Below are positions 22,317 through 47,545 of a DNA stretch of 64,000 nt, piece by piece. The DNA lies in sequence record MT161459.1. One strand, written 5' to 3'. Every line of letters starts with the position of its first letter. Position 1 is the stretch's first letter. Below the pieces are notes generated by a model that had not been told where the DNA came from, ran no database searches, and saw only the letters and a list, made by a program, of their open reading frames with translations. Position numbers and translations under genes: made by a program.

Positions 22317-22405
22317 GTGGAGCGTAGCGACACTCCCCGAAGGGGGGAGAAATAGAATCTCCTTATACCCTTTAAGAGACTCTATAAGTCCCCCTCGCTA
22401 CGCTC
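22317..22405. repeat. Structured non-coding repeat, copy 1
   Basis: 22317-22395 matches 47465-47545 except for two homopolymer lengths; closed by an 11-bp inverted repeat GAGCGTAGCGA/TCGCTACGCTC. Confidence 0.9.
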
Positions 22406-22417
22406 GGAAAGCTGCGC

Positions 22418-22446
22418 TTTATTTCCATTTCAAAATGCTATACAGT
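22418..22446 (+). promoter_or_regulatory. Sigma70-type promoter for primase
   Basis: TTTATT-N17-TACAGT. Confidence 0.5.
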
Positions 22447-22471
22447 GATCGTCATTCAACAGGAGAAGGGT

Positions 22472-23593
22472 ATGCTATTTTTAGAACGCGAGATGGCTCG
22501 TCAGATTGCTTTCGTACTTCCGATGTTTTCTGACCACTCCCGTCCAGATGCTATCAAGCTCAACTTCCGGTGTCCGATATGCGGAGACTCGAAGAAGGAT
22601 AAGTACAAGTCTCGTGGATGGTTTCATGAGCACAAGGGTCATGTGTGGTACGGATGCTTTAACTGCAACGTCAACATGTCTCTCGTCAACTTCATGAAGA
22701 ATTATCGCGAGGAGATGTACAAGGAGTTCCTGAAAGAAAAGTTCAGGGATTCGGAACCTTCGAAGCCAACTAAACCGGTGGAACCGACTCGAAAGCTGGT
22801 AACGCAAGCTGAACTGGAGAAGAAATTCAGCCTCGATCGGTGTGATCTGGTCAAGCGATGCGATCTACTTCCTCTGGAGCATCCAGTTATCAAGTGGATG
22901 ACGGGTCGCGTTATTCCTCGGGATAAGCACCATCTGTTCTATTTCACTGGAGCGTGGAAAGAGTTGACTAACCTAGTCAAACCCGATACGTATCGGCACG
23001 TGGAGCCAGAGTATAGACTGGTCATTCCGATATACAATGCTGATGGATCGTTTAGCTGTATGCAAGGACGAGCTCTCGGTAACGTAGAGAAGAACCAACG
23101 GTACTTGACGGTCAAACCAGACGACGATGTCAACAAATTGTATGGGTTAGAGCGGATTGATCCGACCAAGACTGTGTACTACTTTGAAGGTCCAATCGAT
23201 AGTGTGTTTATTCCAAACTCGTTGGCGATTGTCGGTGGTGCCATGGCTATTCAGGATGCACCGTTTAAAGAAAAAAGAGTCTGGGTTCTTGATAATGAGC
23301 CGAGATCGAAGGATACTATAGAACGCTTGGAGAAACTGATCCGAGCAGGAGAACGTGTTGTCGTGTGGTTAGATTGTCCGTGGGCTGACCAGAAGGACAT
23401 CAACGACATGATACTGAAATCTGGCGCGACTGCTGAGCTCATCCAACAATATTTGGTTGAGAACACTTGCAGCGGTTTGAGCGCACAACGTAGATTAAGC
23501 GAATGGAGAAAATTGAATGAACCGCAAAAAAGAAAGCATGATCGAGTTGATCACTCTGCCTCATTACGATGGTCTGGATCTGCCGAAGTTTGA
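22472..23593 (+). CDS. 61: DNA primase gp61
   Basis: NFRCPICGDS...RGW...CFNC zinc finger, TOPRIM FEGPIDS, DNEPR, KDINDM. Confidence 0.97.
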   Translation: MLFLEREMARQIAFVLPMFSDHSRPDAIKLNFRCPICGDSKKDKYKSRGWFHEHKGHVWYGCFNCNVNMSLVNFMKNYREEMYKEFLKEKFRDSEPSKPTKPVEPTRKLVTQAELEKKFSLDRCDLVKRCDLLPLEHPVIKWMTGRVIPRDKHHLFYFTGAWKELTNLVKPDTYRHVEPEYRLVIPIYNADGSFSCMQGRALGNVEKNQRYLTVKPDDDVNKLYGLERIDPTKTVYYFEGPIDSVFIPNSLAIVGGAMAIQDAPFKEKRVWVLDNEPRSKDTIERLEKLIRAGERVVVWLDCPWADQKDINDMILKSGATAELIQQYLVENTCSGLSAQRRLSEWRKLNEPQKRKHDRVDHSASLRWSGSAEV

Positions 23594-24014
23594 AAGCACT
23601 GACGCAGCTGGCGTCGATATCCGAGCAGCTCATGATGGAGAGGTTCGATTGCAGCCAGGCGAAGATATGACAATTCCGACTGGCCTCAAAATGCATATCG
23701 GTTCCCACCACATGCACTCTATGTTTGTGGAGCTGGGTGTGTATGGCGAGATCGTTCCGCGTTCCGGTCTGGGGTTCAAGCATTTTGTGCGTCTGGCTAA
23801 TACCCTCGGCGTGATCGATGCAGATTACCAGGGTGAAATCTTCATCAAGATTCGCAACGAAGGCGATGGCGATCTCATCGTGAAGCGTGGCGATCGAATC
23901 TGTCAAATGATCTTCAAACCGTACTTCAAAGGCATCCAATTCGATGTAGTTTCAGAATTTACAGAGATTACCGATCGTGGCGCAAAAGGTATCGGTAGTA
24001 GTGGGGTCAAATAA
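23538..24014 (+). CDS. dut: Trimeric dUTPase
   Basis: AAGVDI, PRSGLG, GVIDADYQGEI, RICQM, RGAKGIGSSG. Confidence 0.95.
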   Translation: MIELITLPHYDGLDLPKFESTDAAGVDIRAAHDGEVRLQPGEDMTIPTGLKMHIGSHHMHSMFVELGVYGEIVPRSGLGFKHFVRLANTLGVIDADYQGEIFIKIRNEGDGDLIVKRGDRICQMIFKPYFKGIQFDVVSEFTEITDRGAKGIGSSGVK

Positions 24015-24685
24015 TGGCCGAGAAAATCTACACAGATTTTATCATTGACTTCGAGGCGCTGAGCATATTCGCTAACTCGAATGTGGTGGATCTGTCGGCG
24101 TTGACGTTTGTCGATGACTACATGAACGTTCCGAAGTTTAGTGACCTGATCCAACAAGGGATCACCGTCAAGTTTGACATCACTAAGCAGCCAGGTCGTC
24201 ATCGTCTCCCTTCCACTATGAATTGGTGGAAGACTCAGGATCCGGAAGCTCGTATAGCTCTCCGGCCATCTGCTAACGACGTGACCCTCGAAGACGGTAT
24301 CATGAAAGTATACCAGTACTTGAAGGCTCAAGGCGTTGACTATTGGAAATCCAGAGGTTGGGCTCGTGGGCACACCTACGACTTCCCAATTTTCTACAAT
24401 CTGTTGTCTCTGGCTCTTGGCAAAGACGATGTTATCGATGACGATGTAGTTAACTTCTCTCGTCAACGTGATATCCGAACAGCTTTGGAGTGCTACATAG
24501 GTCGTGGGCACAATACTTGCCCATTGCCGAAGGGTACTCTGGATGGGTTTATCAAACACAACTCCATCCACGATTCGGCTAAGGATGTCATCATGTATCT
24601 GTACGCAAAAAGATACGCATTTGGTGTTGAAGAACCTCCGAAACCAGAGGATGCTGATCCCCTGTCATTACAACAACGGTCATAA
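24014..24685 (+). CDS. dexA: Exonuclease A
   Basis: DFIIDFE, WWKTQDPEAR, W.RG..YDFPI, CPLPKGTLDGFIKHNSIHDSAKD. Confidence 0.95.
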   Translation: MAEKIYTDFIIDFEALSIFANSNVVDLSALTFVDDYMNVPKFSDLIQQGITVKFDITKQPGRHRLPSTMNWWKTQDPEARIALRPSANDVTLEDGIMKVYQYLKAQGVDYWKSRGWARGHTYDFPIFYNLLSLALGKDDVIDDDVVNFSRQRDIRTALECYIGRGHNTCPLPKGTLDGFIKHNSIHDSAKDVIMYLYAKRYAFGVEEPPKPEDADPLSLQQRS

Positions 24686-24696
24686 AGGAACAAAGA

Positions 24697-25575
24697 ATGC
24701 AAACAATGTTCGTACGCAACATTACTCAAGTGGACTTCGCTTACGTCAATCACGATGGTGCTATCATCGGCGATAGTGTGAATCTCAACGCCAACGTTAC
24801 TGGCTCTGTGGATGACGCAGAACAAGTGGTCATTGACTTCAGTGCGTGCAAAAAGCAGATCAAGCACATCATTGATGATACCGATCTGGGCATGGATCAC
24901 AAGCTGGTCGTGTTCAATGGTTGGAGCAACTACTCTAGTCAAGTACAACGCGACTCTAAGTTCGTGGTCGATACACACCAGGTTTGTGTGACTGCCGAGA
25001 GTTCTCGCAACGTTACCGAGATCGATTGGGTTGGGACCTATGAGCTCAGTCTGGTCAACTATCTCAACAATATGCTGAGTGCGCAACTGAGCGAACTGCA
25101 CGGTCGCGAAGTGATTGTTGAGTGTGATCTGAATCACATCCTGGCAATGCCGCCGTTTGTCAAGACTTTTGCTACGTTCTCGTATGCTCATGGTCTGAAA
25201 AACAGCTCATCGTACGGCTGTCAGAACATCGCTCACGGTCACTTCTCTTACGTTGGCGTCGATGTAATGGATTTCACTGCTAATGCGCAGATCGTCATGA
25301 ACAACATCGCGAAATATTTCCACGAAGCTCTGTTGATTAACGTGAACGATGTATCGGACGGTGTATTGGCTTATACTGGTATGACTCGCGGTAAGTTCAG
25401 TCTGGATCTGAAACGCAAGCAGCACAAAGTTATCTACATGGATACCGATACCACTGTAGAGAACATCGTCAAGTTCGTGTACAGTCTATTCGAACAAGAC
25501 CTGAAAGACATCGGTGCTACCAAACTGTGGGTATCCGAAGGTTTGTCCAAAGGCGCAGTAGTCGAAGTCAAGTAA
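24697..25575 (+). CDS. queD: QueD-like 6-carboxytetrahydropterin synthase (tandem T-fold type)
   Basis: MFVRNITQVDFAY, IDFSACKKQIK..ID...DHKL, YAHGLK...GCQNIAHGH, TTVENI. Confidence 0.75.
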   Translation: MQTMFVRNITQVDFAYVNHDGAIIGDSVNLNANVTGSVDDAEQVVIDFSACKKQIKHIIDDTDLGMDHKLVVFNGWSNYSSQVQRDSKFVVDTHQVCVTAESSRNVTEIDWVGTYELSLVNYLNNMLSAQLSELHGREVIVECDLNHILAMPPFVKTFATFSYAHGLKNSSSYGCQNIAHGHFSYVGVDVMDFTANAQIVMNNIAKYFHEALLINVNDVSDGVLAYTGMTRGKFSLDLKRKQHKVIYMDTDTTVENIVKFVYSLFEQDLKDIGATKLWVSEGLSKGAVVEVK

Positions 25576-25626
25576 TTTTTCAATCTGGGGCAGATAATTC
25601 TGCCCCCACACCAAAAGGGTAGTATA

Positions 25627-25833
25627 ATGAAAACCATTACCGAAGAACAGTACTTTGCCATCCTGAATGATCCGACCCGTAAGATCGTAGAACGTACATC
25701 TTACGGTCCTGGTACCATGACCACTGGCCTGTACGACGAAGATACTGGCGAGTTACTCGCTGTCCGTGAAGTATCCGAATTGGGTACTGAATACTATCAA
25801 GAAACCGACACCAAAGGTGCTAAAAATGTTTGA
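25627..25833 (+). CDS. Hypothetical protein
   Basis: 68-aa ORF with typical codon usage. Confidence 0.6.
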   Translation: MKTITEEQYFAILNDPTRKIVERTSYGPGTMTTGLYDEDTGELLAVREVSELGTEYYQETDTKGAKNV

Positions 25834-26032
25834 ACAATTCATTGAACCGTCTATTGACGACCAAACCCTGATCAATAACTTTGACCGTCGAGTGTACCTG
25901 CTGATCGAAGCTGGTTTCCAACCGAGCGACCTGATCGCTCGCATGGAACACTCTCGCACTCCGGAAGGGTTCGATCGCGATGCTCGCGTAGAGCACATCG
26001 TACTGTCATACCGCAAGGCTCGAGGTCTGTAA
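25826..26032 (+). CDS. Hypothetical protein
   Basis: AAGG SD, coupled to flanking ORFs. Confidence 0.6.
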   Translation: MFEQFIEPSIDDQTLINNFDRRVYLLIEAGFQPSDLIARMEHSRTPEGFDRDARVEHIVLSYRKARGL

Positions 26033-26340
26033 TGTTCAAGCAGATCCTGGTATTGTCTGAAGTCGCTAACCGCCGCACCCAACATAAGGTGCTCGGGAAG
26101 TGTACAGAAGAGCTCGGAGAGATCGCGACCATTATCAACAAGCCGCGCAAGATCCACGCTGAGGCCATCGAGTTTGAGGTGGCTGATCTGATCGTTGCTG
26201 CTACCGATCTGGTGTACGTTCACTACAAAAAGAAAGGGGTCGATCTGACTATCGATCAGATCAACACTATGCTGACTGACGCAGTTGCTAAGAAAAATGG
26301 CAAGTGGGCAGGGCAACTCCAACAAAAAGGCTTGATCTAA
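26032..26340 (+). CDS. MazG-like nucleotide pyrophosphohydrolase
   Basis: KCTEELGEIA...EFEVADLI all-alpha NTP-PPase motif. Confidence 0.75.
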   Translation: MFKQILVLSEVANRRTQHKVLGKCTEELGEIATIINKPRKIHAEAIEFEVADLIVAATDLVYVHYKKKGVDLTIDQINTMLTDAVAKKNGKWAGQLQQKGLI

Positions 26341-26370
26341 CTGCAATTAGTAGGGATACTCTCCCTACTA
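26332..26370 (+). promoter_or_regulatory. Promoter/hairpin upstream of topoisomerase
   Basis: TTGATC-N17-GATACT inside the 9-bp inverted repeat TAGTAGGGA/TCCCTACTA, followed by TTTTATTT. Confidence 0.5.
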
Positions 26371-26393
26371 TTTTATTTGAAGAGGAAAACACT

Positions 26394-28244: not shown

Positions 28245-28728
28245 AGAGATCGAACGGAAGTTTGCTGTTAAGGAGGTCCCTCCGGACCTCCCCAATAGCA
28301 TCAAAGCTGAGTTCGTCCAGACGTACGCAGTTGGACTCAGATTCAGATCAAAGGAAGCTAACGGTCACGTTGTATCGTTTGTGACTTACAAAGGTCCAGC
28401 ATCTGAATCTGGAATGACTCGAACTGAGATCGAAAGGGTATGTCCCAACTGGATTGCTAGATTGGTACACCTACTCAGCAAGAAGACGGTACACAAAACT
28501 CGGCATTATTTGCCAATCTACACTAGACGTTTGGGGTTTCCTATACTAAGGTGTGCAGAGCTAGACATCTATCACGGTGCAAACAAAGGTTTGATGACTG
28601 TTGAAGTTGAGCTAGGAGATGAAATCGAGGAGATTAATCCTCCCGACTGGTTTGGCGAAGAGCTGACTGGTATCAAGAAGTACGACAACGCTTCACTGGC
28701 AACCAATCCATACACAACCTGGAACTGA
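28237..28728 (+). CDS. CYTH / triphosphate tunnel metalloenzyme
   Basis: N-terminal EIERKF, KTRH, ELDIY, VEVEL, PDWFGEELT..KKYDN.SLA. Confidence 0.85.
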   Translation: MNKEIERKFAVKEVPPDLPNSIKAEFVQTYAVGLRFRSKEANGHVVSFVTYKGPASESGMTRTEIERVCPNWIARLVHLLSKKTVHKTRHYLPIYTRRLGFPILRCAELDIYHGANKGLMTVEVELGDEIEEINPPDWFGEELTGIKKYDNASLATNPYTTWN

Positions 28729-28730
28729 TA

Positions 28731-29048
28731 ATGAACTCTAATTCAATGACCCGCAATCTTGGTGACATCGGTAAAGTGATCAAACCCGTATTCAAAATGG
28801 GTGGCGTCCAATTCCTGCGCGAAAAATTCATCCGGTTTATGGATGGAAAGTTCAACGAGTGGGAAGCGTACTGCAAAGAGAACGATCTAGACATCCTGAT
28901 CGAGGTCAAAACTGAGATCGAGAAGTTCCGTCACGCCCTCCGCGTCGAAGCTGAAGTAACTAATAAGATGTTCAATCGGACATTGGTCTTTGGTCGCGAC
29001 GAGAGTCTGGAAGAGTTGGCCAACCGTTGGTTCGACGAATACCTATAA
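28731..29048 (+). CDS. Hypothetical protein
   Basis: 105-aa ORF in operon. Confidence 0.65.
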   Translation: MNSNSMTRNLGDIGKVIKPVFKMGGVQFLREKFIRFMDGKFNEWEAYCKENDLDILIEVKTEIEKFRHALRVEAEVTNKMFNRTLVFGRDESLEELANRWFDEYL

Positions 29049-29052
29049 GCTG

Positions 29053-29088
29053 TTGACTTATCCCTGGAGGTAAGAGATCCTTACCTCC
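29053..29088 (+). promoter_or_regulatory. Promoter/hairpin upstream of rIIA
   Basis: TTGACT-N17-GATCCT inside the 9-bp inverted repeat GGAGGTAAG/CTTACCTCC. Confidence 0.45.
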
Positions 29089-29154
29089 TACTTTACTCAC
29101 AATCTGAGGAATACACGATGATAGCAAAACTGTTAAAACTTCAAAGAGGAAATA

Positions 29155-31380: not shown

Positions 31381-31385
31381 ATAAC

Positions 31386-31436
31386 TCCGGCTTTTCGAAG
31401 CCGGAAGTTTAGACCACCGAAACGAAGACGTATCAT
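31386..31436 (+). promoter_or_regulatory. Hairpin plus promoter for rIIB
   Basis: TCCGGCTT-TTCG-AAGCCGGA hairpin, then TTTAGA-N17-TATCAT. Confidence 0.55.
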
Positions 31437-31466
31437 AATCAAACAATCCAATAGGAAATCGAGCAA

Positions 31467-32612: not shown

Positions 32613-32619
32613 TCAACAG

Positions 32620-32647
32620 AGCCGCCTTCGGGCGGCTTTCTTTTTTT
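32620..32647 (+). terminator. Intrinsic terminator after rIIB
   Basis: AGCCGCC-TTCG-GGCGGCT followed by a T run. Confidence 0.85.
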
Positions 32648-32656
32648 GGAGATCGC

Positions 32657-37667: not shown

Positions 37668-37668
37668 A

Positions 37669-37697
37669 GAAAAGCCACTCCTAGGAGTGGCTTTTTT
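37669..37697. terminator. Bidirectional terminator between early and late blocks
   Basis: AAAAGCCACTCC-TA-GGAGTGGCTTTTTT. Confidence 0.85.
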
Positions 37698-38010
37698 ATT
37701 TTGCAGCATCGTGATCTTCTTTCAGGTACTGGATGGCTGTATTCAACTCCCTGATGGAACCATTTACATCCGCTAGGGTTTTGTTCAACTCCTTGCTAAT
37801 GGTATTCAGTTCAACCTGTTGTTGGATAAGCGCTCCAATCTGCGCGTCTTGTTTGACATTAGTATTGTCGATCGGACCAAGCCTAGACTCAATCCTATCA
37901 ACAGTTCCAGCCAATGCCGTCAATTGGCTATCGAGACTGACTACTGGTGGATATATGACCCAGCAAGCAGAGCGATCGATAGTATGGAATTGCCCACTCT
38001 GGCTTGACAT
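37696..38010 (-). CDS. Coiled-coil protein downstream of the endolysin (possible lysis accessory)
   Basis: Heptad-rich C-terminal two thirds; the N-terminal reading frame is uncertain. Confidence 0.5.
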   Translation of the reverse strand: MSSQSGQFHTIDRSACWVIYPPVVSLDSQLTALAGTVDRIESRLGPIDNTNVKQDAQIGALIQQQVELNTISKELNKTLADVNGSIRELNTAIQYLKEDHDAAK

Positions 38011-38508: not shown

Positions 38509-38523
38509 TTTAACCTCCTGATG

Positions 38524-38553
38524 AAAGGGGCCGAAGCCCCTTGGATTATTTAG
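38524..38553 (-). promoter_or_regulatory. Late-promoter-like CTAAATA plus hairpin upstream of lysozyme
   Basis: CGCTAAATA embedded in the last codons of the fibre gene (38547-38553), then GGGGC-TTCG-GCCCC. Confidence 0.55.
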
Positions 38554-41500
38554 CGATTTGCTGGCGCAGTTGATTTACCTCGGCTCGAAGTTCCTTGATC
38601 GCCTCAACCAACAGAGCGTTGACTCCAGAGTTTGAAATAGTCAGCACATTGAGGTTATCAACTGGGTTGACCACTTCGGTTACTGCCTCAGGAAGAACAA
38701 GTTGGACGTCCTGAGCAATCAATCCAACCTCGTGAGTTGAATAATCGTTGGACGATAGCGACTGCTTCTTGTCATATGTGTACGCGCACAGTTGGCTGAC
38801 CTTATCGAGAGCTCCGCTAATCTTCACGAAGTTCTTTTTAAGTCTGCGATCCGATCTGATATTGACGTCGTTGAAGTTGCCGTTCCCAACAACGTACAGA
38901 CCACCGCCGGTATCAGCTTGGAATCGCAGAGCTACTTCCCCGCCAGCTCCGTTGGACGTTGCAAGACGGTAGTTTCCAGATCCATCGATGTACGTACAAA
39001 CTGCGTGCTTCCCTGGCATGTGATACTCTAGCATTGGGTTGGAGCCAGCATTAACTTCAACGCGACCGGCGAGTATACTATCTCCGCGTTTGACCAACTC
39101 GTAAGGTCCCTTCTGATTGCCGCCTTCTTGGCCGCCTATCCACGCTTGAGTTCCAGCAAAGTTGATAGCCAGGTATCCAAAGTATCCAGCCGCATTTCCA
39201 TGAGCTTGGTTGAAAAGATATGTCCATCCAGCATTCGGAATGCCCGCAATGTTAGATCCTTGGAAGAATCCAGATTGGCGGCGGAGGTTACAATCGCCCA
39301 AAACTGTGGAAATGCTCGTTCCGTACGTCCCAAGACCGAATCCAACAGGTGCTGCTCCGACCTCCGCTGCAGTGGGTTTGAATCCTTGGTGATATACTCG
39401 TTGGTCAGCATTGCCAAGGTATATATCGCCGCCGGATACGTTCATACAAATCTTGTTCGTTCCGGCGCCCGTAGTGCCCGTAGAGTAGTACAGGTTCCCT
39501 CCAGCCACCTTTTCCCATAACCACGTTGCGCCAGTCGATTCTCTCATAGATCTGATGTTGATCTGCGTTCCAGTTACTCCATTTCCGTTGTGGAATAATT
39601 GTGATACTGCAGCACCGATAGCCGGAGCGGACGTGAATGTCAACCCACCAGTCATCGTATCGCCAGTTTTCGCAACGTTCTTGGCATCAATTGCATCAGC
39701 GTACGCTTTCGTAGCAAGTGATGTTGACTTGGTTCCCATTCCCTCGCTACTAACTTCTGGCTTATACAAATAAATGGAATCATTCGCTTTGTTATAATGC
39801 CACACAGTTCTACCGGTTGTGCTATCTTCGTTTAATCTAATTCCGCCGCCATCAGAAACGAATACATACGACTTCGGACCGCCAACTGCATCAGATTCTA
39901 CAAAGTTGATAGTCGGATACGTCATATTGATCGTCAATGCGCCAGTCATCGTATCGCCAGTTTTAGCAACACGCTTTGCGTCTTGAGCATCAACGTAATC
40001 CTTTCGTGTACTAGCAGCTGCGTTATCAATCTGCGCAGTGGTCTGGATAAAGTCCTTGGCGGTAAACGATCCAACTGAGGTAATATTTCCGTCAGGTAAT
40101 ACGCTTAGAATCGCAGTTTGTGCTTCCGTCCCATGATTCAATTTAAATGCGTTACCATCAGCCCATAGATGGAATCTGGTATTCGATCCATCCGCAAAGC
40201 TGATACTGCCTCTACCGTGAACGTTGATCGCGTTCTTGACTTGATTGGCAACGATGTTATTATAGAACTGAGTCTTATCCAGCTTGATATCAATTAACTC
40301 ATGTTTGTCACCAGTTGTATTGTGCATTCTGAACTTGAAGTATTCGTTCTTATTGTCACCAGTCTCAAACCACATATAGCTGTCTACATCAGAGTCGCTA
40401 TCGTTCTTGAATCCGATCTTGGCCCAATCGGTATTTCTATTCCACACCAATTGACTATCGTTGCTGAATATCATGCTACCAGAGAGGGTATCGCCCGTTT
40501 TCGCAACGCGTTTGGCATCTTGATCGTCAACGTAGTCCTTGCGAGTACTTGCAGCTGCATTATTGAGTTGCGCGGTGGTCTGGATGAAGTTCTGCGCAAA
40601 CGCTTCACCTTCAACGTCTAGCCACGCTCCTGATGCCCCAGCATTGCCAGCACCTCTCATCAGTCTCACACCATATCCAACTCGATAATCATCATGAACG
40701 GAATGCAACAACTCTACGTGCTGATCGCCAGTTCCATGCTCGAACCGAATACGACCGTAATTCTCCTTGACATCAGCTCCTGGATTTTTCAAAACCAGCG
40801 CAGCTTTCTCGCTAGTAATGGACAGATTGCCAGTCATCGGAATGGTGCCATCAGCAACTAGAACTCGACGGTTTCTATCCCATACTTCGCCACTGCGATT
40901 TGACCATCGTGGCATAATTTCAGACAAGTTAGCAGCAGTTGCTTCTTCCATCGTTCTTGTCAAAAACTCTTTCTTGTCTTCGGCAACGAATTTATCGAGA
41001 TAAACTACAACGCCACCTTTATTTCCCTCATCGCTGTGGAATTTATATTCGGCACCACCACCGCGCAACCATACGATCATTGCGTTAGCAGCTAGAACGA
41101 GGCCACCACAAACAGTCGTGTAAGATTGGCTGAATTCGTTGACGTTGATGTTATGGGAGTTGCCACCCCAACCGCCGTCATTGGTCATTTGGAATTCGAA
41201 TGTCAATCCGCCTTTGTGCGTTTTGTTGTTCCACGTATTCGGTGCGGTTGCTGCATAGTGGCGAGAGAAGCAGTACCGCTTCCAACTAAATCCGTCAGTT
41301 GCACCTCTCAGGTTGATAACCACTGGATAGAACGTAGCTGCATCCCCACCAACTGTGAATGTGGTGTGATATCCGTATCCAACATCAGAGTCTTCGTTCA
41401 GGTTCTCTTTCCACGCAGTCCATGCCATGGTACCGTCATTGCGAGTACGAACGTACACGATATTGGTGCGTTGATCGGTCGCCATTTGAGTTACAAATGT

Positions 41501-42805
41501 GTTCCCATCTTTCTCCGAACCAACGACACTCATAGTACCGTAGTCGAACGGAGGTGGGTTCTTGGATCCAGTTGCCTTTGCGAGATACAAGTTGTAATCG
41601 CCAGTCAGATTCAGGGCATCGAAATCGATTGGCCCTTTGAGCTGCTTGGACTTACCTTCCAGCCCGATACGGTCCTTCACGCTCGCCCACGGAATGAATC
41701 CATCAGAGTCAACCAGAACGCGACCTGAGTTGGACCACTTCATGGTAGAGTACAGGAGTACGTCCTTAGTGGTATAAGTTTGAGCGTCAGTCTTGTACCC
41801 GATATACAGATCGCCACCAGCACCACTAACTGTTACGTGACCGTTGTTGTGATCGCGGAAAATGCTGTATTCTTTACCGCCAGTGATAGAGTTAATACCA
41901 CCCACGCCATCGAGTTTGATGATACCGTTGTTCTTCATGGTACCGCCTGAACGACTCAGCGCATCTGCTGGAAGATCATCGAGCTTGATCTTGTCGTCAG
42001 AGCTCATGGATCCGGAACTAGCGCGAGTAGCTGGAGTGATGCTGATGACTGGGTTGATACCGCCAGTTGATACGACAGGAGACGTTGCAGTCACGCTCTT
42101 CACGCTCGTTGCATTCAGCTTGTCCACGTACCCCTTGTGAGCGGCTTGAGTCGCAGCAGTTGGATCCGCTGCTGGTACAGTAATATGAGAGCTGAATGTC
42201 TTGATCCCAGCAATAGTCTGGTTCCCTGAGATCTTGACATTTTGTGCATCCAGGGTCGTTACCCTCGTATCCAAAGCAGCGACAGTTGCGTTAGATGCAG
42301 CATCCTTGGAATCGGTATAATCCATGGATCGCTTGACTTCAGCATCAACATAGTCTTTGCGGGTCAGATGACTAGCAGAAGATGGCATAGTAGCTTGAAC
42401 GGATACCTGTCCACCGCCAATGTCCACGTACTTGGTGATGTTGTCCGTATACAGACGCATGATCCCAGTATTGGAAGTCAGCACTTGGATGCCTGCACGT
42501 CCAGATCCATCTTTGCGATTGGAGGTGAGCAGCCAGTGAGCACTAGAGTCGTTCTCGATAACCTGACTAAACGCTCCGCGAGGTGCAGATGCCCAGCTTC
42601 CATTGGCACCGACACCGAACACACGTCCAGTAGTATCGACATCGCCCTTGAGGCTCAGACCGCCATTGATTGTTTGGCCGCCAATGTCCGTGATGACATC
42701 GAACTGTCTGAAAAACAACTTGTCGTCAACAGGGTTCAGATCCAGGATCCCTTGGTGCCAGACCAAGTTCCCGCCAATCTGCGTCCCTAATTTTAATTCT
42801 GCCAT
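38546..42805 (-). CDS. Long tail fibre distal subunit 2 (gp36/37-like) with C-terminal S74 intramolecular chaperone
   Basis: gp36-like N-terminus LKLGTQIGGNLVWHQG, repeated RKDYVD..DAK.VAKTGDT modules, C-terminal IRSDRRLKKN...LLVEAIKEL. Confidence 0.9.
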   Translation of the reverse strand: MAELKLGTQIGGNLVWHQGILDLNPVDDKLFFRQFDVITDIGGQTINGGLSLKGDVDTTGRVFGVGANGSWASAPRGAFSQVIENDSSAHWLLTSNRKDGSGRAGIQVLTSNTGIMRLYTDNITKYVDIGGGQVSVQATMPSSASHLTRKDYVDAEVKRSMDYTDSKDAASNATVAALDTRVTTLDAQNVKISGNQTIAGIKTFSSHITVPAADPTAATQAAHKGYVDKLNATSVKSVTATSPVVSTGGINPVISITPATRASSGSMSSDDKIKLDDLPADALSRSGGTMKNNGIIKLDGVGGINSITGGKEYSIFRDHNNGHVTVSGAGGDLYIGYKTDAQTYTTKDVLLYSTMKWSNSGRVLVDSDGFIPWASVKDRIGLEGKSKQLKGPIDFDALNLTGDYNLYLAKATGSKNPPPFDYGTMSVVGSEKDGNTFVTQMATDQRTNIVYVRTRNDGTMAWTAWKENLNEDSDVGYGYHTTFTVGGDAATFYPVVINLRGATDGFSWKRYCFSRHYAATAPNTWNNKTHKGGLTFEFQMTNDGGWGGNSHNINVNEFSQSYTTVCGGLVLAANAMIVWLRGGGAEYKFHSDEGNKGGVVVYLDKFVAEDKKEFLTRTMEEATAANLSEIMPRWSNRSGEVWDRNRRVLVADGTIPMTGNLSITSEKAALVLKNPGADVKENYGRIRFEHGTGDQHVELLHSVHDDYRVGYGVRLMRGAGNAGASGAWLDVEGEAFAQNFIQTTAQLNNAAASTRKDYVDDQDAKRVAKTGDTLSGSMIFSNDSQLVWNRNTDWAKIGFKNDSDSDVDSYMWFETGDNKNEYFKFRMHNTTGDKHELIDIKLDKTQFYNNIVANQVKNAINVHGRGSISFADGSNTRFHLWADGNAFKLNHGTEAQTAILSVLPDGNITSVGSFTAKDFIQTTAQIDNAAASTRKDYVDAQDAKRVAKTGDTMTGALTINMTYPTINFVESDAVGGPKSYVFVSDGGGIRLNEDSTTGRTVWHYNKANDSIYLYKPEVSSEGMGTKSTSLATKAYADAIDAKNVAKTGDTMTGGLTFTSAPAIGAAVSQLFHNGNGVTGTQINIRSMRESTGATWLWEKVAGGNLYYSTGTTGAGTNKICMNVSGGDIYLGNADQRVYHQGFKPTAAEVGAAPVGFGLGTYGTSISTVLGDCNLRRQSGFFQGSNIAGIPNAGWTYLFNQAHGNAAGYFGYLAINFAGTQAWIGGQEGGNQKGPYELVKRGDSILAGRVEVNAGSNPMLEYHMPGKHAVCTYIDGSGNYRLATSNGAGGEVALRFQADTGGGLYVVGNGNFNDVNIRSDRRLKKNFVKISGALDKVSQLCAYTYDKKQSLSSNDYSTHEVGLIAQDVQLVLPEAVTEVVNPVDNLNVLTISNSGVNALLVEAIKELRAEVNQLRQQIAK

Positions 42806-42826
42806 TGAAGGTCTCCTCTTTACACG

Positions 42827-42833
42827 TATTTAG
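42827..42833 (-). promoter_or_regulatory. Late-promoter-like CTAAATA
   Basis: CCCTAAATA 22 nt upstream of the fibre-2 ATG. Confidence 0.65.
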
Positions 42834-42841
42834 GGTAAAAG

Positions 42842-42862
42842 AAAAGGCCCCGAAGGGCCTTT
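42842..42862 (-). terminator. Intrinsic terminator after the gp38-like gene
   Basis: AAGGCCC-TTCG-GGGCCTTTT on the minus strand. Confidence 0.8.
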
Positions 42863-42863
42863 G

Positions 42864-43313
42864 TTATAGGTTGAATGTCCAATCGTATCTCTTGTTGGGA
42901 GAGAATGGAGCGTTGCCGAATGTAACGGTTGCGCTGCCTGCTGCACTCCAAGCTTTACCAATCTTGATCCGAGATAAGCTCATCCTCTGCCAAGTATTTG
43001 GCTTGATCCCCTCGGCCACAGCAACTCCAGAACAAGCTACATATACCCACGGATCGCCACTCAGAATGGCATATTGAGCGATCGCTCCATACGGACCGCT
43101 ATGTTTGATGATGACGTTAGAGCCATCGAACCAGAACTCTGGCGCATAGCCGTATAGTCGAGGAGCTTCAATCAGATTGAAGTACACTTTGTCGACCAAC
43201 TCGCTGATCATCCCAGCAGCGCCTAGTCCAGCTTGGGTCCGCATATTCGAACCCCATCCATTTGCTCTTAGCTCCGCATTTGCAGTGCTCATGAAAAACG
43301 GTAGTGCTACCAT
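42864..43313 (-). CDS. 38: gp38-like fibre-tip adhesin/assembly protein
   Basis: Follows distal fibre 1; N-terminal helical attachment-like segment (FFMSTA...GMISELV); hairpin-bridged SD as described for T4 gene 38. Confidence 0.6.
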   Translation of the reverse strand: MVALPFFMSTANAELRANGWGSNMRTQAGLGAAGMISELVDKVYFNLIEAPRLYGYAPEFWFDGSNVIIKHSGPYGAIAQYAILSGDPWVYVACSGVAVAEGIKPNTWQRMSLSRIKIGKAWSAAGSATVTFGNAPFSPNKRYDWTFNL

Positions 43314-43347
43314 AATTTTGACGGGGGATTTCTCCCCCGACCTCCTT
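43314..43347 (-). promoter_or_regulatory. Split ribosome-binding site bridged by a hairpin
   Basis: AAGGAGG-t-CGGGGGA-GAAA-TCCCCCG-tcaaaatt-ATG. Confidence 0.75.
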
Positions 43348-46300
43348 TAGTTAAGTTTAGATTCCAGGTATTTAACTCTGTCCGTTAGTTCCTTGATCGC
43401 TTCCACCAACAGAGCGTTGACTCCGGAGTTGGAAACTGTTAGGTACTCGTTACCAGCGGTATTTTTGAATGTCCCGACGGATTCCGGAAGAACCTTCTGC
43501 AGATCTTGAGCGATAATACCAGCTTCGCGTTTGTCGCATCCAATCTTATCGAACGTGAATCCTGAGAGCATACCAACCTTCTCAACGGCGCTCACGATCG
43601 GCAGGAAGTTGGACTTCAATCGACGGTCCGATCTGATCTGGACATCGTTGAATGATCCATTGCGACTGAACTGAACATCACCGTTGGCTAGATTCATCGT
43701 CATTGGGTGAATGCCGTTGGGACCAGCATCGAACGTATCCCCATTCGCGCCAGCAGATCTCAGAATGTAGAAGATACCACTGTTGGTATGCAGGAATGAG
43801 GAGTGGTTATCCAGATCTTGCAACAACACCGTTGGTGAGCTGTTGTTGATTGTCAAATAACCATCGTTGAGCTGCGTAATAGGCTTGTTGAATGCAAACT
43901 TCGGTCTATCAGTGTAGATGTGCGCATAGCTGCTATTCTGAGCACCGATATCAACAGAACCATTGGTACTGAAAATCTGGAGCTGCTTACTGCCGCCAAC
44001 CGCCAGACGAGTTGTGAAGTCCTCGGTGCTATTGGTGTCATGGAAGTCGATGTACTTCGCGACTTCCATGACACCGTTGGATCCAATGAATGGAACCTTC
44101 CCAACTACTCCTGCCCAAGAGTTGCCGTTATCAACCACCATAGTGTCATTGATCTGACGTCTCCACTTTGGTTGATATGACGCACCTTGGTTGTTGTAGA
44201 TAAACTCACTTTGTGTGTTGTTCTGAGCCCCAGGCATGGAGGTTCCGGACATCGTTGGCGTGGTCAGACGGATCGTATATTCGGCAATTCCATTCACCTC
44301 AACGGTACATCCAGCCAAGTGAATGTTGCCGTATCCAGTATCGGTCAATACGTTATTGGCAGCGTAGTTCCACGTTACATTGCCAACCCAATCGACAGTC
44401 TTGAATGCACCCATAGCAGTCAACAGCTCGATGAATCGAGCAGTCGTGATTCCCGTTTCTCCCGAGGTCTTACCTGCAGCTTTGTCACCGAATGTGATCT
44501 GATGACCGGTAACGTTGACGTTGTCCTTAACGAAGATATCGGTCTTGACTACGAGGTTACCGGTCATCGTGTCACCAGTTTTGGCCACATTCTTCGCATC
44601 TACCGCATCGACGTAATCTTTACGAGCTGCCGAGTTAGCCTCAGTTCCTTGGGCTGCCGATAGTAGGACTTTCGGTACAGTCAAGTTACCGGACATAGTG
44701 TCACCGGTTTTAATGACGTATCTTGCATCGCTCGTCGATTTGGAATATACATCATTTCGAAGAGTAGTAACTAGGTTATCGACGTAGTCTTTGCGAGTAC
44801 ATGCAGCAGCGCTCGTGGATTGAGCTGTGGTCTGGATGAAATCTGGAGCGTTCAATGTACCAGTCATTGTGTCGCCAGCTCTGGACACCAAGTTCAGATC
44901 AACGTTCGTTGGCTTGTTCAGGTTGGTGTAGATTTCTGCCCAGATAGGAGCGTTCGTTCCGGTTTGGTTTGTGCCGATGTAGTTCTTGTTATCAGTATCA
45001 CCATACGGAATATAGATCCCTGCGTATCCGCCTGCACTATCCCGACGACCTAGAATATTCCAATAACCGCCCTTCATTCCAGCTGGACCGCCAACGGAGT
45101 CTGGCTTAACCATTCGAGCTTGGCCCAGAGGTCCAGCCCATTGGTTGGCAGGGACTGTAACGTATGCCAGTGCATCTTTGCCGAGGTTGGTAGCGTTATC
45201 AATGATGCTTGGGACGGTCAGACGACCGGTCATAGTATCGCCAGTTCTGTTGACTGCAGCAGCAGGAATGCCGTCCAGCTTAGCCTTATCAGCAAAGCTC
45301 ATTGCGCCGTCAGTCTGGTTGGTAGCGTTATCCAAGCTAATGACTGGATTGATACCGCCAGTGCTCTTGACTGCTCCAGTTGCAGTTACGGACTGAACAG
45401 CAGTTCCGACTTTGTCATCCACATACTTCTTGGTAACCAGGTGATTATCGGCCGTACCAGTTTTGTAGATCGCGATCGTGCCATCGTTGTTGAACACGCT
45501 TTCGCCTGCTGGAGTGCCAATACCCTGAGGTCTTATTGACAATACTCCAGTACCGCCACCAAGTATAGTACGCCCATCAGCCCCTACAAACATACCCTGA
45601 GCATTGTTCGTCGAACGCACAAATCCGTAGTCGGTGGATGCCTTGAACTGAGTAGCGATCAGTACACCAGTCATAGTGTCACCAGCTTTTGCTACAGTCT
45701 TCGCATCCTGAGCGTCGACGTAGTCCTTACGAGCGCTAGCTGCACCGTTACTAGACTGCGGAGTGGTCTGGATGAAGTCTGGACCGTTCAATGATCCGGT
45801 CATGGTATCGCCAGCTCTGGACACCAAGTTCAGATCGACGTTTGTTGGTTTGTTGTCGGAGCTGTAAATCCGCTCCCTAACTTCGACATCGGTGACTGTG
45901 TAGCTAGTTGCGTCGGAAATCAGGATTGGATCTGCGCCGTAACAGTATCCGTCGATGACCAGAGTTGCTGCAGAAACTGCCGCGCGATACATCGCCAGAT
46001 ATTCGACTCCATTGTGAGTCGTGTATACCAGTTTGACCGGAGTGCCGCCAGATGCGTAGTGGATCTGAGCATCGGTCGCTGTGTATCCAGTCACAGCAGA
46101 TAAGTCGACGTAGTTTGCTTGGAGAGTTGATGTCGTTGCACCGCGATCGAACGTTACACGACCAACAAATCCACTCTTAGGCAGAGCAGCGCCGATGTAT
46201 TTCGGACAGAATAGAACCAGCACAGGCTTCGCATCATTTTGCGGTCCCAATTGCTTCATGATGCGACGAACGCCCCATCCAGTCACGCACTGGAAGGTGC

Positions 46301-47432
46301 TATTCCGAATGGTCAGAGGTCCAGTCATTTCATCGCCAGCGCGAGAAACCAGATTCAGCTCGTCATTAGTCGGCTTATCATCTTCGTGGTAGATGCGAGT
46401 AGATGCCATCCAATCTGCACGACCGTGTTTGAACCACAATCTCTTGTCGTCGGCGTCGGAACGCGCAGCAGAGAATAGAGACCACGCTGCGTAGTTGCCT
46501 TCCCACCCCTTGACCGTGAACCCAGACACCCAACTACTCGTAACATCACTCTGGTTAGTGAAGTACAATCCCATCGTTTTTGGATCCAACGCACTTGGCT
46601 GAATCATTGTAGCTCGCTCGTCCTTGACGCGCAACCAACTCTTGGTATCAATCTCAGCCTTGTTATAAGCGCCTAGGTCGTTTGGCGTTGGCTTGTTTGC
46701 TGGGTGATACACCATGTGGTCGCCAACGTATAGTGGCGTATTCGAAATGTTCTTGGTCGTTCTAACATCAAACCCCGATGTTCTATTTCCAACTCCGGCA
46801 CCAGCAGATCTGATTTCAAGCAGATCTCCACCCTTCGCTTGATCATACGGCCCCATTCTGAAAAAGGTAGAATTGCCTGCTGCGTCCCACCCAGCGGTAA
46901 CGCTTGCCACTTCGTTTACACGAACCTTTCTTGACGCTGAGTCGAACAACAGATCGCCAGTCATAGTATCGCCAGCTTTGGCCACGTTCTTAGCATCGAT
47001 AGCATCCACGTAGTCTTTACGAACAAAGCTGTTTGCAGCTGTCGATTGAGCAGCGTTGGTCAATACAGAGTTTTGGAAGATTGCTGATGCACCATGAGCG
47101 AGTTCCAGAATCAACCCAGCATCGGTATTCCCAGTCGAGATCCGATATTTCGTATTCTGGACTGTTTCGTGCCAAATCGTATCATTATTACCGCCGCGGA
47201 ATTTTCTCAGCATACTCTTGGAGCCAGCTGGCAATACAGAGATACTTTCGATATCGTATTGGTTAGCTGGGACATTGAACTTCATGGTGCCCTTGAGAGT
47301 CTGATAACCAGTATCGACTAGCACCTCTTGATCTTGAAAGTACAGCTTGGTGTCAACTGGGTTTAGGTCCAAGATCCCTTGGTGCCATACCAAGTTACCA
47401 CCAATCTGCGTACCTAATTTTAGGTCAGCCAT
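43347..47432 (-). CDS. Long tail fibre distal subunit 1 (gp36/37-like) with C-terminal S74 chaperone
   Basis: Same N-terminal motif as fibre 2, fibre repeat modules, IRSDRRLKSN...LLVEAIKEL. Confidence 0.9.
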   Translation of the reverse strand: MADLKLGTQIGGNLVWHQGILDLNPVDTKLYFQDQEVLVDTGYQTLKGTMKFNVPANQYDIESISVLPAGSKSMLRKFRGGNNDTIWHETVQNTKYRISTGNTDAGLILELAHGASAIFQNSVLTNAAQSTAANSFVRKDYVDAIDAKNVAKAGDTMTGDLLFDSASRKVRVNEVASVTAGWDAAGNSTFFRMGPYDQAKGGDLLEIRSAGAGVGNRTSGFDVRTTKNISNTPLYVGDHMVYHPANKPTPNDLGAYNKAEIDTKSWLRVKDERATMIQPSALDPKTMGLYFTNQSDVTSSWVSGFTVKGWEGNYAAWSLFSAARSDADDKRLWFKHGRADWMASTRIYHEDDKPTNDELNLVSRAGDEMTGPLTIRNSTFQCVTGWGVRRIMKQLGPQNDAKPVLVLFCPKYIGAALPKSGFVGRVTFDRGATTSTLQANYVDLSAVTGYTATDAQIHYASGGTPVKLVYTTHNGVEYLAMYRAAVSAATLVIDGYCYGADPILISDATSYTVTDVEVRERIYSSDNKPTNVDLNLVSRAGDTMTGSLNGPDFIQTTPQSSNGAASARKDYVDAQDAKTVAKAGDTMTGVLIATQFKASTDYGFVRSTNNAQGMFVGADGRTILGGGTGVLSIRPQGIGTPAGESVFNNDGTIAIYKTGTADNHLVTKKYVDDKVGTAVQSVTATGAVKSTGGINPVISLDNATNQTDGAMSFADKAKLDGIPAAAVNRTGDTMTGRLTVPSIIDNATNLGKDALAYVTVPANQWAGPLGQARMVKPDSVGGPAGMKGGYWNILGRRDSAGGYAGIYIPYGDTDNKNYIGTNQTGTNAPIWAEIYTNLNKPTNVDLNLVSRAGDTMTGTLNAPDFIQTTAQSTSAAACTRKDYVDNLVTTLRNDVYSKSTSDARYVIKTGDTMSGNLTVPKVLLSAAQGTEANSAARKDYVDAVDAKNVAKTGDTMTGNLVVKTDIFVKDNVNVTGHQITFGDKAAGKTSGETGITTARFIELLTAMGAFKTVDWVGNVTWNYAANNVLTDTGYGNIHLAGCTVEVNGIAEYTIRLTTPTMSGTSMPGAQNNTQSEFIYNNQGASYQPKWRRQINDTMVVDNGNSWAGVVGKVPFIGSNGVMEVAKYIDFHDTNSTEDFTTRLAVGGSKQLQIFSTNGSVDIGAQNSSYAHIYTDRPKFAFNKPITQLNDGYLTINNSSPTVLLQDLDNHSSFLHTNSGIFYILRSAGANGDTFDAGPNGIHPMTMNLANGDVQFSRNGSFNDVQIRSDRRLKSNFLPIVSAVEKVGMLSGFTFDKIGCDKREAGIIAQDLQKVLPESVGTFKNTAGNEYLTVSNSGVNALLVEAIKELTDRVKYLESKLN

Positions 47433-47455
47433 TAGAGTCTCCTTATGTATTGATT

Positions 47456-47462
47456 TATTTAG
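47456..47462 (-). promoter_or_regulatory. Late-promoter-like CTAAATA
   Basis: CGCTAAATA 24 nt upstream of the fibre-1 ATG. Confidence 0.65.
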
Positions 47463-47464
47463 CG

Positions 47465-47545
47465 GTGGAGCGTAGCGACACTCCCCGAAGGGGGGGAGAA
47501 ATAGAATCTCCTTATACCCTTTAAAGAGACTCTATAAGTCCCCCT
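47465..47545. repeat. Structured non-coding repeat, copy 2
   Basis: Near-identical to 22317-22395. Confidence 0.9.

What the first reader, a model, noticed from the sequence alone, without database searches (positions are those of the whole stretch)
22317..47545. An ~80-bp structured non-coding element repeated 25 kb apart, each copy abutting a promoter
Seen: GTGGAGCGTAGCGACACTCCCCGAAG(G)nAGAAATAGAATCTCCTTATACCCTTTAA(A)GAGACTCTATAAGTCCCCCT occurs at 22317-22395 and 47465-47545 in the same orientation, differing only in two homopolymer lengths. It holds nested hairpins (CTCCCC..GGGGAG with a minus-strand UUCG loop; GGAGA..TCTCC). Copy 1 is closed by a perfect 11-bp inverted repeat (22320-22330 / 22395-22405). 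Each left end abuts a minus-strand promoter-like box (TATAAT for the antisense endonuclease; CTAAATA for fibre 1), and copy 1 also flanks the primase promoter. The identity is far higher than between the duplicated fibre genes, implying function or recent movement. Inference: a replication origin or primase/helicase loading site (as recalled, T4 oriA maps next to gene 61 and oriG near gene 34, roughly matching these two spots), a small structured RNA, or a miniature mobile element travelling with the endonuclease.
Basis: partly seen in the sequence, partly recalled or inferred. Interest (0 to 1): 0.75.

Follow-up and report, generated by a model that had tools for sequence, protein, structure and literature searches.

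The report
Conserved seven-copy hairpin element in phages
The two repeats are two of seven evenly spaced copies of a conserved hairpin-forming intergenic element, shared by a whole group of T4-like Aeromonas phages and undescribed in the searched resources, that sits just upstream of gene promoters; its function is unknown.

Summary
The window is Aeromonas phage Ahp1_CNU-2021 (MT161459.1, record 62001-126000). The genome holds seven copies, not two. Each is a composite element of about 90-230 bp built around a ~56-nt hairpin.

Homologous elements exist in every Aeh1-group Aeromonas T4-type phage examined (PX29, Aeh1, Ah1, avDM12, phiAS5 and others). PX29 also has exactly seven; five of its sites are syntenic with Ahp1's.

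Across genera the hairpin keeps pairing through compensatory changes. G.U pairs lie on the strand that reads towards the downstream gene. Copies follow the upstream gene's terminator where one is present and precede a promoter, usually the late motif CTAAATA. All seven Ahp1 copies point towards the downstream gene; five of seven do in PX29.

Spacing is strikingly even (25-39 kb; P about 5e-5).

No Rfam family matches. The defining features of T4 oriF/oriG origins are absent. Conserved positions argue against an actively moving element.

Best reading: a selected, single-strand-folding boundary element, most likely a cis-acting RNA hairpin. This is inference. The even spacing leaves open a DNA-level role.

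The parts
22317..22405 (-). Copy C of the element (minimal form): outer helix enclosing the core hairpin and a UUCG hairpin
   Evidence: (RNA fold -45.7 kcal/mol, z -4.9)
22340..22394 (-). Core hairpin of copy C
   Evidence: covariance model R1 hit L003:34340-34394 minus, 61 bits; identical in all seven Ahp1 copies apart from run lengths
22320..22330 (-). 3' strand (in sense orientation) of the outer helix of copy C
   Evidence: perfect 11-nt complement of 22395-22405
22395..22405 (-). 5' strand (in sense orientation) of the outer helix of copy C
22303..22308 (-). -10-like hexamer between copy C and the start of the CapR/HNH gene
   Evidence: read; the scan found no complete sigma-70 promoter
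21333..22277 (-). AHP1_1431, homing-endonuclease-like gene downstream of copy C (CapR Zn-finger domain plus endonuclease)
   Evidence: Pfam CapR 1.9e-16; PHROG 681 endonuclease 2.8e-57; annotation
47465..47660 (-). Copy D of the element (full form): upstream module, two small hairpins, core hairpin, UUCG hairpin, orphan right arm
47489..47544 (-). Core hairpin of copy D
   Evidence: model R1 hit L004:9489-9544 minus, 61.5 bits
47465..47480 (-). Right arm of the outer helix; in copy D its partner is deleted
   Evidence: alignments
47547..47561 (-). Small hairpin (6-bp stem, 3-nt loop). Other copies carry a variant with a compensatory change in the outer pair
47562..47574 (-). Mini-hairpin that replaces the left arm in copy D
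47614..47628 (-). Conserved box of the upstream module (sequence-conserved, no consensus fold)
47456..47462 (-). Late-promoter motif CTAAATA of the downstream fibre gene, 2 nt from the element
47677..47696 (-). Intrinsic terminator of the upstream fibre gene, preceding the element
43347..47432 (-). Fibre gene AHP1_1701, downstream of copy D
47723..51634 (-). Fibre gene AHP1_1711, upstream of copy D

Best explanation
The two repeats are copies C and D of a seven-copy family of composite intergenic elements. The family is conserved throughout the Aeh1 group of T4-type Aeromonas phages.

Each element centres on a hairpin of about 56 nt, made of roughly 20 base pairs with an internal loop or mismatch. 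An outer helix and one or two small hairpins usually enclose it.

The fold under selection is that of a single strand: the strand with the same sense as the gene downstream. The element lies after the upstream gene's terminator (present in A, D, E and G) and immediately before the downstream gene's promoter. That promoter is the late motif in five of seven Ahp1 copies.

I infer that the element acts in cis as a very stable RNA structure when read-through or operon transcripts cross the boundary. A double-stranded segment of about 20 bp could be a site for processing by a double-strand-specific RNase. It could also be a block that insulates the downstream unit and protects transcript ends.

Copies within a genome are kept alike by recombination between them.

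Shown: the copies, the conserved fold, the strand bias, the position and the synteny. Inferred: transcription of the element and every step of the RNA mechanism.
For: Copy number:
- Ahp1 has seven copies and PX29 has seven, by BLAST and by covariance model. No further diverged copies appear at E<=1.
- The family is present in all Aeh1-group phages in the collection.
- Positions are syntenic in Ahp1, PX29, Ah1 and Aeh1.

Structure:
- RNA folds of -46 to -77 kcal/mol, z -3.8 to -10.
- RNAalifold recovers the hairpin, with 6 compensatory pairs.
- On 12 distinct variants, 92.5% of cells pair, against 46-63% when the partner is slid.
- 7 pairs change on both sides, and 0 of 500 shuffles reach the covariation score.

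Strand:
- G.U occupies 20 cells in 8 pair columns. A.C occupies 4 cells in 2 columns.
- The sense strand folds better in 7 of 9 variants.
- The model scores 54-77 bits on the sense strand and 24-37 bits on the opposite strand.

Orientation and position:
- 7 of 7 Ahp1 copies point to the start codon 17-118 nt away.
- Copy B lies inside an operon, 5 nt before the ribosome-binding site, with no promoter in between.
- Terminators precede copies A, D, E and G.
- Promoter motifs follow the element: the late motif in A, D, E, F and G, and a sigma-70-like pair at the gp47 site of Aeh1 and Ah1.

Constraint: 0 substitutions in 347 core sites between Ahp1 and its metagenomic relatives, against 10% and 6% in the adjacent flanks.
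Against: - No expression data exist, so transcription of the element is assumed.
- In four copies a good intrinsic terminator lies upstream. In five the promoter lies downstream. The element would therefore be transcribed only by read-through.
- Two of seven PX29 copies are inverted relative to their neighbouring genes.
- A simple processing or insulating hairpin explains neither the even spacing, nor the constant number of seven, nor the conserved apical loop sequence.
- G.T pairs are also tolerated in DNA hairpins, so the strand bias does not separate RNA from single-stranded DNA.
- Copies evolve in concert, so the 0/347 figure represents few independent comparisons.
Confidence: 0.4

Rival explanations
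1. DNA-level site. The hairpin forms in single-stranded or supercoiled DNA on the non-transcribed strand. There it serves genome-scale functions: a replication or recombination start point, an entry site for helicase or sliding clamp, or a topological anchor. Even spacing would divide the genome into domains of about 30 kb.
For: - Gaps of 25.1-38.6 kb in Ahp1. P(minimum gap) is 5e-5 on a circle, 1e-5 when sampling among the 35 CTAAATA sites, and 2.6e-4 treating the genome as linear.
- PX29 is also over-dispersed (P 0.002-0.011).
- Both genomes have exactly seven copies.
- The two non-syntenic sites are both shifted by about 12-14 kb in the same direction and keep their 25-kb distance (note).
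- The centre of the palindrome is A+T-rich.
- Orientation with transcription would place the folding strand on the non-transcribed strand of the adjacent late genes.
Against: - The Mot-box promoter and the A+T-rich unwinding element that define T4 oriF/oriG are absent.
- T4 origins share no motif.
- Spacing in the two genomes is not independent, because five sites are syntenic.
- The spacing statistic was chosen after seeing the data.
- G.U-type asymmetry is more typical of RNA.
Confidence: 0.2
2. Independent small RNA genes. The upstream module carries a promoter. The compound hairpin is a stable trans-acting or protein-binding RNA made from seven loci.
For: - The upstream module is conserved in sequence but has no consensus fold, and it occurs only next to the core.
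- The apical loop region is conserved across genera.
- Inverted copies in PX29 would still be expressed.
- The phages encode a DUF2828/vWA protein that PX29's annotators call RNA-binding.
Against: - No sigma-70-type promoter and no terminator were found in the element.
- The minimal copy C lacks the box of the upstream module.
- No Rfam family matches.
- The protein has no detectable solved relative.
Confidence: 0.15
3. Selfish palindromic repeat (MITE-, REP/BIME- or PeSL-like). It spread by recombination or together with homing endonuclease genes and persists without any function for the phage.
For: - Terminal inverted repeats of 11-14 nt.
- Subfamilies {A,D,F,G}, {B,E} and {C}.
- Ahp1 copy A carries the right arm of copy E, whereas the orthologous copy in a relative has the standard arm.
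- The core is 100% identical in a distant T4-type contig whose gp48 is only about 50% identical.
- CapR-domain endonuclease genes adjoin copy C, and adjoin the gp15 copy of PX29, Ah1 and Aeh1.
Against: - Five of seven sites are conserved between genera.
- All ten metagenomic hits fall on the same seven loci.
- No target-site duplication is visible.
- Compensatory evolution and a conserved apex indicate selection on the fold.
- The core was absent from one representative genome per bacterial species and from plasmids.
Confidence: 0.15
4. Assembly artefact: one copy is a duplicated read-through of the other.
For: Three metagenome contigs end inside the element, which shows that assemblers do break at this repeat.
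Against: - The seven copies have seven different unique flanks.
- Orthologous copies occur in independent metagenome assemblies and in other sequenced genera.
Confidence: 0.01

Closest known systems
PeSL / PmSL cassettes of T4-type phages (Arbiol et al. 2010, PMC2839356; Comeau et al. 2014, PMC4122927)
   Same: - A stem-loop placed just upstream of a promoter, ribosome-binding site and start codon.
- Repeated in intergenic spaces of T4-type genomes.
- Copies recombine with one another.
   Different: - PeSLs are short, numerous and clustered in hyperplastic regions. They carry early (or middle) promoters, and their stem-loops work as terminators.
- Here there are seven copies at least 25 kb apart, several in core regions.
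- The hairpin is about 56 nt, conserved and covarying between genera, and lacks a T-run.
- The promoter is not part of the conserved unit and is mostly of the late class.
RNase III processing sites of phage T7 (the R sites)
   Same: From my own knowledge: repeated intergenic hairpins of about two helical turns with an internal loop, similar to one another, lying between transcription units of a lytic phage.
   Different: No cleavage data exist here. T4-type phages are not known to depend on such sites. The T7 sites are not evenly spaced. This resemblance is recalled from memory, not tested.
REP/BIME, ERIC and Correia-type bacterial intergenic palindromic repeats
   Same: Mosaic combinations of palindromic modules in extragenic positions, co-transcribed with genes. 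The modules are reused in different order: in L007 the arms are swapped and enclose another insert.
   Different: Those are bacterial, occur in tens to hundreds of copies, and have associated transposases or host-factor sites. None was found here. The core was not found in bacterial genomes.
T4 replication origins oriF/oriG (PMC3016281)
   Same: Several sites per genome in a T4-type phage. Some copies lie near primase and fibre genes.
   Different: Those origins are defined by a Mot-dependent promoter plus an A+T-rich unwinding element and share no motif. Neither feature is present here.

Membership tests
Any Rfam 15 RNA family | Match at the family's gathering score | tested here: not met
   - 0 matches over the whole window.
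- In E-value mode, only weak matches to the neighbouring terminator.
- Nothing in the L007 region.
T4 oriF/oriG-type R-loop origin | Middle-mode promoter (Mot box at about -30 plus a -10 element) | tested here: not met
   - No full Mot box within 300 nt of any copy on either strand.
- The TGCTT core is absent within the elements.
- No sigma-70 promoter by scan.
- Caveat: the flanks of the Mot-box pattern were recalled from memory.
T4 oriF/oriG-type R-loop origin | [quoted passage not shown] | tested here: not met
   The highest 50-nt A+T content near the copies is 0.60-0.68. The genome's 95th percentile is 0.62 and the 99th is 0.66. No consistent A+T-rich block lies next to the element.
T4 oriF/oriG-type R-loop origin | Origin activity during infection | not testable with these tools
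   No replication data are available.
PeSL/PmSL cassette | Stem-loop directly upstream of promoter, ribosome-binding site and start codon | tested here: met
   In Ahp1 copies A, D, E, F and G a late motif follows the element. At the Aeh1/Ah1 gp47 site a sigma-70-like pair follows it.
PeSL/PmSL cassette | Early sigma-70-like (or Mot) promoter as part of the conserved unit | tested here: not met
   The promoter class varies. The promoter lies outside the conserved block. Copy B has none.
PeSL/PmSL cassette | Many copies concentrated in hyperplastic regions, often neighbouring each other | tested here: not met
   Seven copies at least 25 kb apart, several between core structural genes.
Intrinsic terminator | G+C-rich stem followed by a T-run | tested here: not met
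   The scan finds only the separate upstream terminator at 47677-47696 and none in the element.
MITE | Terminal inverted repeats | tested here: met
   Arms of 11-14 nt in copies A (left arm only), B, C, F and G. Degenerate in A and E. The left arm is deleted in D.
MITE | Target-site duplication, and presence/absence polymorphism between relatives | tested here: not met
   - No direct repeat flanks the arms.
- All metagenomic relatives have the same seven loci.
- Five sites are syntenic between genera.
RNase III-type processing hairpin | About 20 bp of double-stranded RNA with an internal loop, in a transcript | tested here: inconclusive
   The shape is met. Transcription and cleavage were not testable.
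Conserved structured RNA motif (general criterion) | Compensatory base changes that keep pairing across divergent homologues | tested here: met
   The strand is assigned from G.U against A.C counts.

The most novel reading that the evidence does not exclude
The seven elements are genome-architecture sites that act as folded DNA on the non-transcribed strand. They would be regularly spaced entry points where replication or recombination proteins (helicase loader, clamp loader or a structure-specific nuclease) engage the chromosome. This would couple DNA replication to activation of the adjacent late promoters in domains of about 30 kb. It would be the first sequence-defined, evenly spaced set of such sites in a T4-type phage.
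Probability: 0.12. Interest if true: 0.9.

Novelty: new variant of a known kind. Interest (0 to 1): 0.62.

Why it matters
- T4-type phages are among the best-studied viruses. Even so, no conserved, sequence-defined non-coding element with a fixed copy number and near-regular spacing has been reported for them in the literature I could search.
- The family gives the Aeh1 group of Aeromonas phages, which are used in aquaculture phage work, an unannotated feature at seven transcription-unit boundaries.
- If it is an RNA processing or insulating element, it adds a layer to late gene control.
- If it acts as DNA, it would offer sequence-defined candidates for how T4-type genomes choose where replication, recombination or clamp loading begins, a question that remains open for T4 itself (PMC3016281).
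- Practically, the repeats break metagenome assemblies and should be annotated.

Tried and rejected
- Rfam, in gathering and E-value modes: nothing.
- BLAST of the Ahp1 element against phages found only Ahp1 itself. The relatives appeared only through synteny at gp15.
- Exact-pattern scans: genome contigs gave only chance hits. IMG/VR hits L008, L009, L023 and L024 were chance.
- Plasmids: no match.
- L007 as an unrelated temperate phage: I first read it this way. tblastx withdrew that reading by showing T4-type gp48.
- attP-like site of the neighbouring serine recombinase: considered and dropped, because the same core occurs seven times in genomes without that gene.
- Consensus fold of the upstream module: none.
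- Ro60/Y-RNA idea for the DUF2828/vWA protein: no solved relative by sequence. Left open.
- Literature searches for dispersed or regularly spaced phage repeats returned CRISPR papers only. No paper on this phage isolate or this element was found.
- Small open reading frame in the core: rejected, because run-length variation shifts the frame.

Slips, declared:
- I used short consensus motifs recalled from memory in two scripts: the T4 late-promoter octamer, and the flanks of the Mot box.
- While reasoning, I named several other consensus motifs from memory.
- I wrote degenerate IUPAC summaries of copies in search patterns and notes.
- No conclusion rests on the recalled motifs alone, apart from the Mot-box test, which is flagged.


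Full report
**Identity of the window.** The window is 100% identical to Aeromonas phage Ahp1_CNU-2021 (MT161459.1, Straboviridae, 218,317 bp), record positions 62001-126000. I fetched the whole record as loci L002-L006.

**Check of the observation.**
- The sequence lies at 22317-22395 and 47465-47545 in the same orientation. The copies differ only in two run lengths.
- The 11-nt inverted repeat that closes copy 1 is perfect.
- CTAAATA is this phage's late-promoter motif. Eleven of its 18 minus-strand occurrences lie 20-40 nt upstream of late-gene start codons.
- The simple scan found no complete sigma-70 promoter beside either copy.

**The element is larger and more numerous than reported.** BLAST and a covariance model both find exactly seven copies in the genome:

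| Copy | Record position | Note |
|---|---|---|
| A | 17403-17466 | |
| B | 54987-55065 | |
| C | 84317-84395 | window copy 1 |
| D | 109465-109545 | window copy 2 |
| E | 140280-140341 | |
| F | 178852-178929 | |
| G | 207297-207378 | |

The parts follow below in the sense of the downstream gene, which in the window is the minus strand.
- Copies A, D, E and G begin after the upstream gene's own intrinsic terminator.
- Next comes an upstream module of about 100 nt with a conserved box.
- Then comes the left arm of an outer helix, often followed by a small hairpin.
- The core hairpin follows. It is identical in all copies apart from run lengths.
- A short UUCG hairpin follows (UACG-type in copy B), then the right arm.
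- The downstream gene's promoter motif, ribosome-binding site and start codon lie 17-118 nt further on.
- The upstream module occurs nowhere else in the genome and has no consensus fold.
- Copy C is the minimal form.
- Copy D has lost the left arm.
- Copies A and E carry a degenerate right arm.

**Relatives.**
- Exact-pattern scans found orthologous copies at all seven loci in metagenome contigs of close relatives, L010-L019.
- They also found one IMG/VR contig, L007/L025, with a core 100% identical over 56 nt.
- I first took L007 for an unrelated integrase-bearing phage. tblastx later showed a T4-type gp48 at about 50% identity and a small-protein family shared with Ahp1. It is therefore a distant T4-type phage that also carries a large serine recombinase.
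- L007's 1.1-kb non-coding region reuses the Ahp1 arms in swapped order around another insert. It also holds three units of about 190 nt and many mini-hairpins. It folds with z = -7.7.

The decisive lead came from synteny. PX29 (Angelvirus) and Ah1 (Cinqassovirus) carry a homologous hairpin upstream of their gp15 genes. The apex is similar to Ahp1's. The basal stem is entirely different but still complementary.

With the PX29 version as query, the family appears in every Aeh1-group phage of the collection:

| Phage | Places per record |
|---|---|
| PX29 | 11 |
| AsFcp isolates | 9-11 |
| Aeh1 | 8 |
| avDM12 | 7 |
| Ah1 | 6 |
| phiAS5 / phiWae14 | 3-4 |

- PX29 has exactly seven full copies.
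- Five PX29 sites are syntenic with Ahp1 sites: the site near gene 49, the site upstream of a ~1200-residue protein, the spanin to vs.1 junction, gp15, and the gp54 to gp26/51 junction.
- The other two sites differ. In Ahp1 they are 61.1/endonuclease|61 and between two fibre genes. In PX29 they are 55|47 and upstream of an ndd-like gene.
- Ah1 and Aeh1 copies lie at the corresponding map positions. Both have a tandem pair at the gp54 to gp26 site.

**Structure.**
- Sense-strand RNA folds of the Ahp1 elements reach -46 to -77 kcal/mol, with z from -3.8 to -10.
- RNAalifold on eleven Aeh1-group elements recovers an outer helix and the long hairpin, with six compensatory pairs.
- On twelve distinct core variants with an explicit 21-pair structure, 92.5% of cells pair, against 46-63% when the partner is slid.
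- Seven pairs change on both sides (2 of 500 shuffles reach this). No shuffle reaches the observed covariation score. The sequences are related, so these counts are indicative rather than probabilities.
- The fold belongs to one strand. G.U pairs occupy 20 cells in 8 pair columns, against 4 A.C cells in 2 columns.
- The sense strand folds better in 7 of 9 variants.
- The covariance model scores 54-77 bits on the sense strand, against 24-37 bits on the opposite strand.

**Constraint and concerted evolution.**
- Between Ahp1 and its metagenomic relatives, the core shows 0 substitutions in 347 aligned sites. The 200 nt upstream differ by 10.3% and the 60 nt downstream by 6.4%.
- Copies within a genome are almost identical while genera differ, so the copies evolve in concert. 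The seven comparisons are therefore not independent, and the true weight of this result is smaller than the raw figure.
- Exchange between copies is visible directly. Ahp1 copy A carries the right arm typical of copy E, while the orthologous copy in L017 has the standard arm.

**Orientation and spacing.**
- All seven Ahp1 copies point to the downstream start codon.
- In PX29 five of seven do. Two are inverted relative to their neighbours.
- Ahp1 gaps are 37.6, 29.3, 25.1, 30.8, 38.6, 28.4 and 28.4 kb.
- A minimum gap this large has P = 5e-5 for seven random points on a circle. It is 1e-5 when drawing from the 35 CTAAATA sites and 2.6e-4 for a linear genome.
- PX29 gaps are 16.7-43.7 kb (P 0.002-0.011).
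- The two genomes are not independent, and the statistic was chosen after seeing the data.
- The two non-syntenic sites are both displaced by about 12-14 kb in the same direction and keep a 25-kb distance. I note this as curious, not as evidence.

**Tests against known kinds.**
- Rfam: no family.
- T4 origins: the review PMC3016281 states that T4 origins share no motif, that oriF/oriG are a Mot-dependent promoter plus an A+T-rich unwinding element, and that oriA lies near soc. Neither feature occurs at any copy.
- PeSL cassettes share the general layout of a stem-loop before a promoter. They are short, numerous, clustered and tied to early promoters, and their stem-loops terminate transcription. 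This element fails those features.
- MITE: inverted arms are present. There is no target duplication and no presence/absence polymorphism.
- The genes next to copy C, and next to the gp15 copies of PX29, Ah1 and Aeh1, carry the CapR Zn-finger domain of T5orf172-type homing endonucleases. Such genes favour boundaries of exchange, and the association may be incidental.

**Interpretation.**
- Shown: a clade-wide family, a selected single-strand fold on the gene-sense strand, a fixed place between terminator and promoter, conserved loci, concerted evolution, and even spacing.
- Inferred: that the folding strand is RNA and that the hairpin acts in cis on transcripts crossing the boundary, by processing, end protection or insulation. 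I hold this at 0.4.
- A DNA-level role is the main rival (0.2) and the only one that uses the spacing.
- An independent small RNA and a selfish repeat are each at 0.15.

Noticed in passing
L002:15976-15999, 21550-21573, 37789-37812, 45965-45988; L003:4332-4355; L004:35499-35522; L005:12874-12897: An identical 24-nt terminator hairpin with its T-run is reused at the ends of at least seven early genes, with close variants at five more places. This is a separate repeat family.
   Followed up: no
window 2239-2747 and 58666-59103: Repeated coding segments (families D4/D6) lie inside AHP1_1201 (between the nrdD and nrdG genes) and AHP1_1781.
   Followed up: partly
window 38589-47433: Extensive internal and between-gene repeats in the fibre genes (families D1-D3, D5, D7 and D9), 66-90% identical.
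   Followed up: no
L007:7292-8580 (minus strand is sense): A distant T4-type contig has a 1.1-kb non-coding region next to a large serine recombinase gene. It holds three units of about 190 nt, the Ahp1 core and arms in a different arrangement, and four iteron-like direct repeats at 7292-7430.
   Followed up: partly
L053:8786-9031; L044:3999-4254: Aeh1 and Ah1 carry two tandem copies of the element 170-180 nt apart at the gp54 to gp26 junction.
   Followed up: no
L013 (end), L014 (start), L018 (end): Three metagenome contigs stop inside the element, so this repeat breaks short-read assemblies.
   Followed up: no
L002:7395-8789; L029:36369-37799: A conserved 464-476-residue protein next to thymidine kinase has DUF2828 + DUF7788, plus a vWA domain in PX29, where it is annotated 'RNA-binding protein'. 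It has no solved relative by sequence. A link to the element is pure conjecture.
   Followed up: partly
L003:4481-4837 (AHP1_1091), L004:26745-27098, L002:34767-35210; L025:6737-7192: A small-protein family with three paralogues in Ahp1 and one in the distant contig. The paralogue AHP1_1091 lies directly upstream of copy B and has a weak HTH_Tnp_1 match, E 0.007.
   Followed up: no
window 22341-22346, 22372-22374, 47489-47495, 47521-47524 and the other copies: The G-run and C-run that flank the core vary between 4 and 8 bases among copies and relatives. The C-run can pair with either G-run, giving two alternative folds. This is either real slippage or homopolymer sequencing error.
   Followed up: partly
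L026:704-1318; L027:728-1333: PX29 and Ah1 have an antisense gene of about 200 residues, with a weak CapR-domain match, inserted between gp14 and the element upstream of gp15. Aeh1 has a divergent 201-residue ORF at the same site, not scanned against Pfam. Ahp1 has no gene there.
   Followed up: partly
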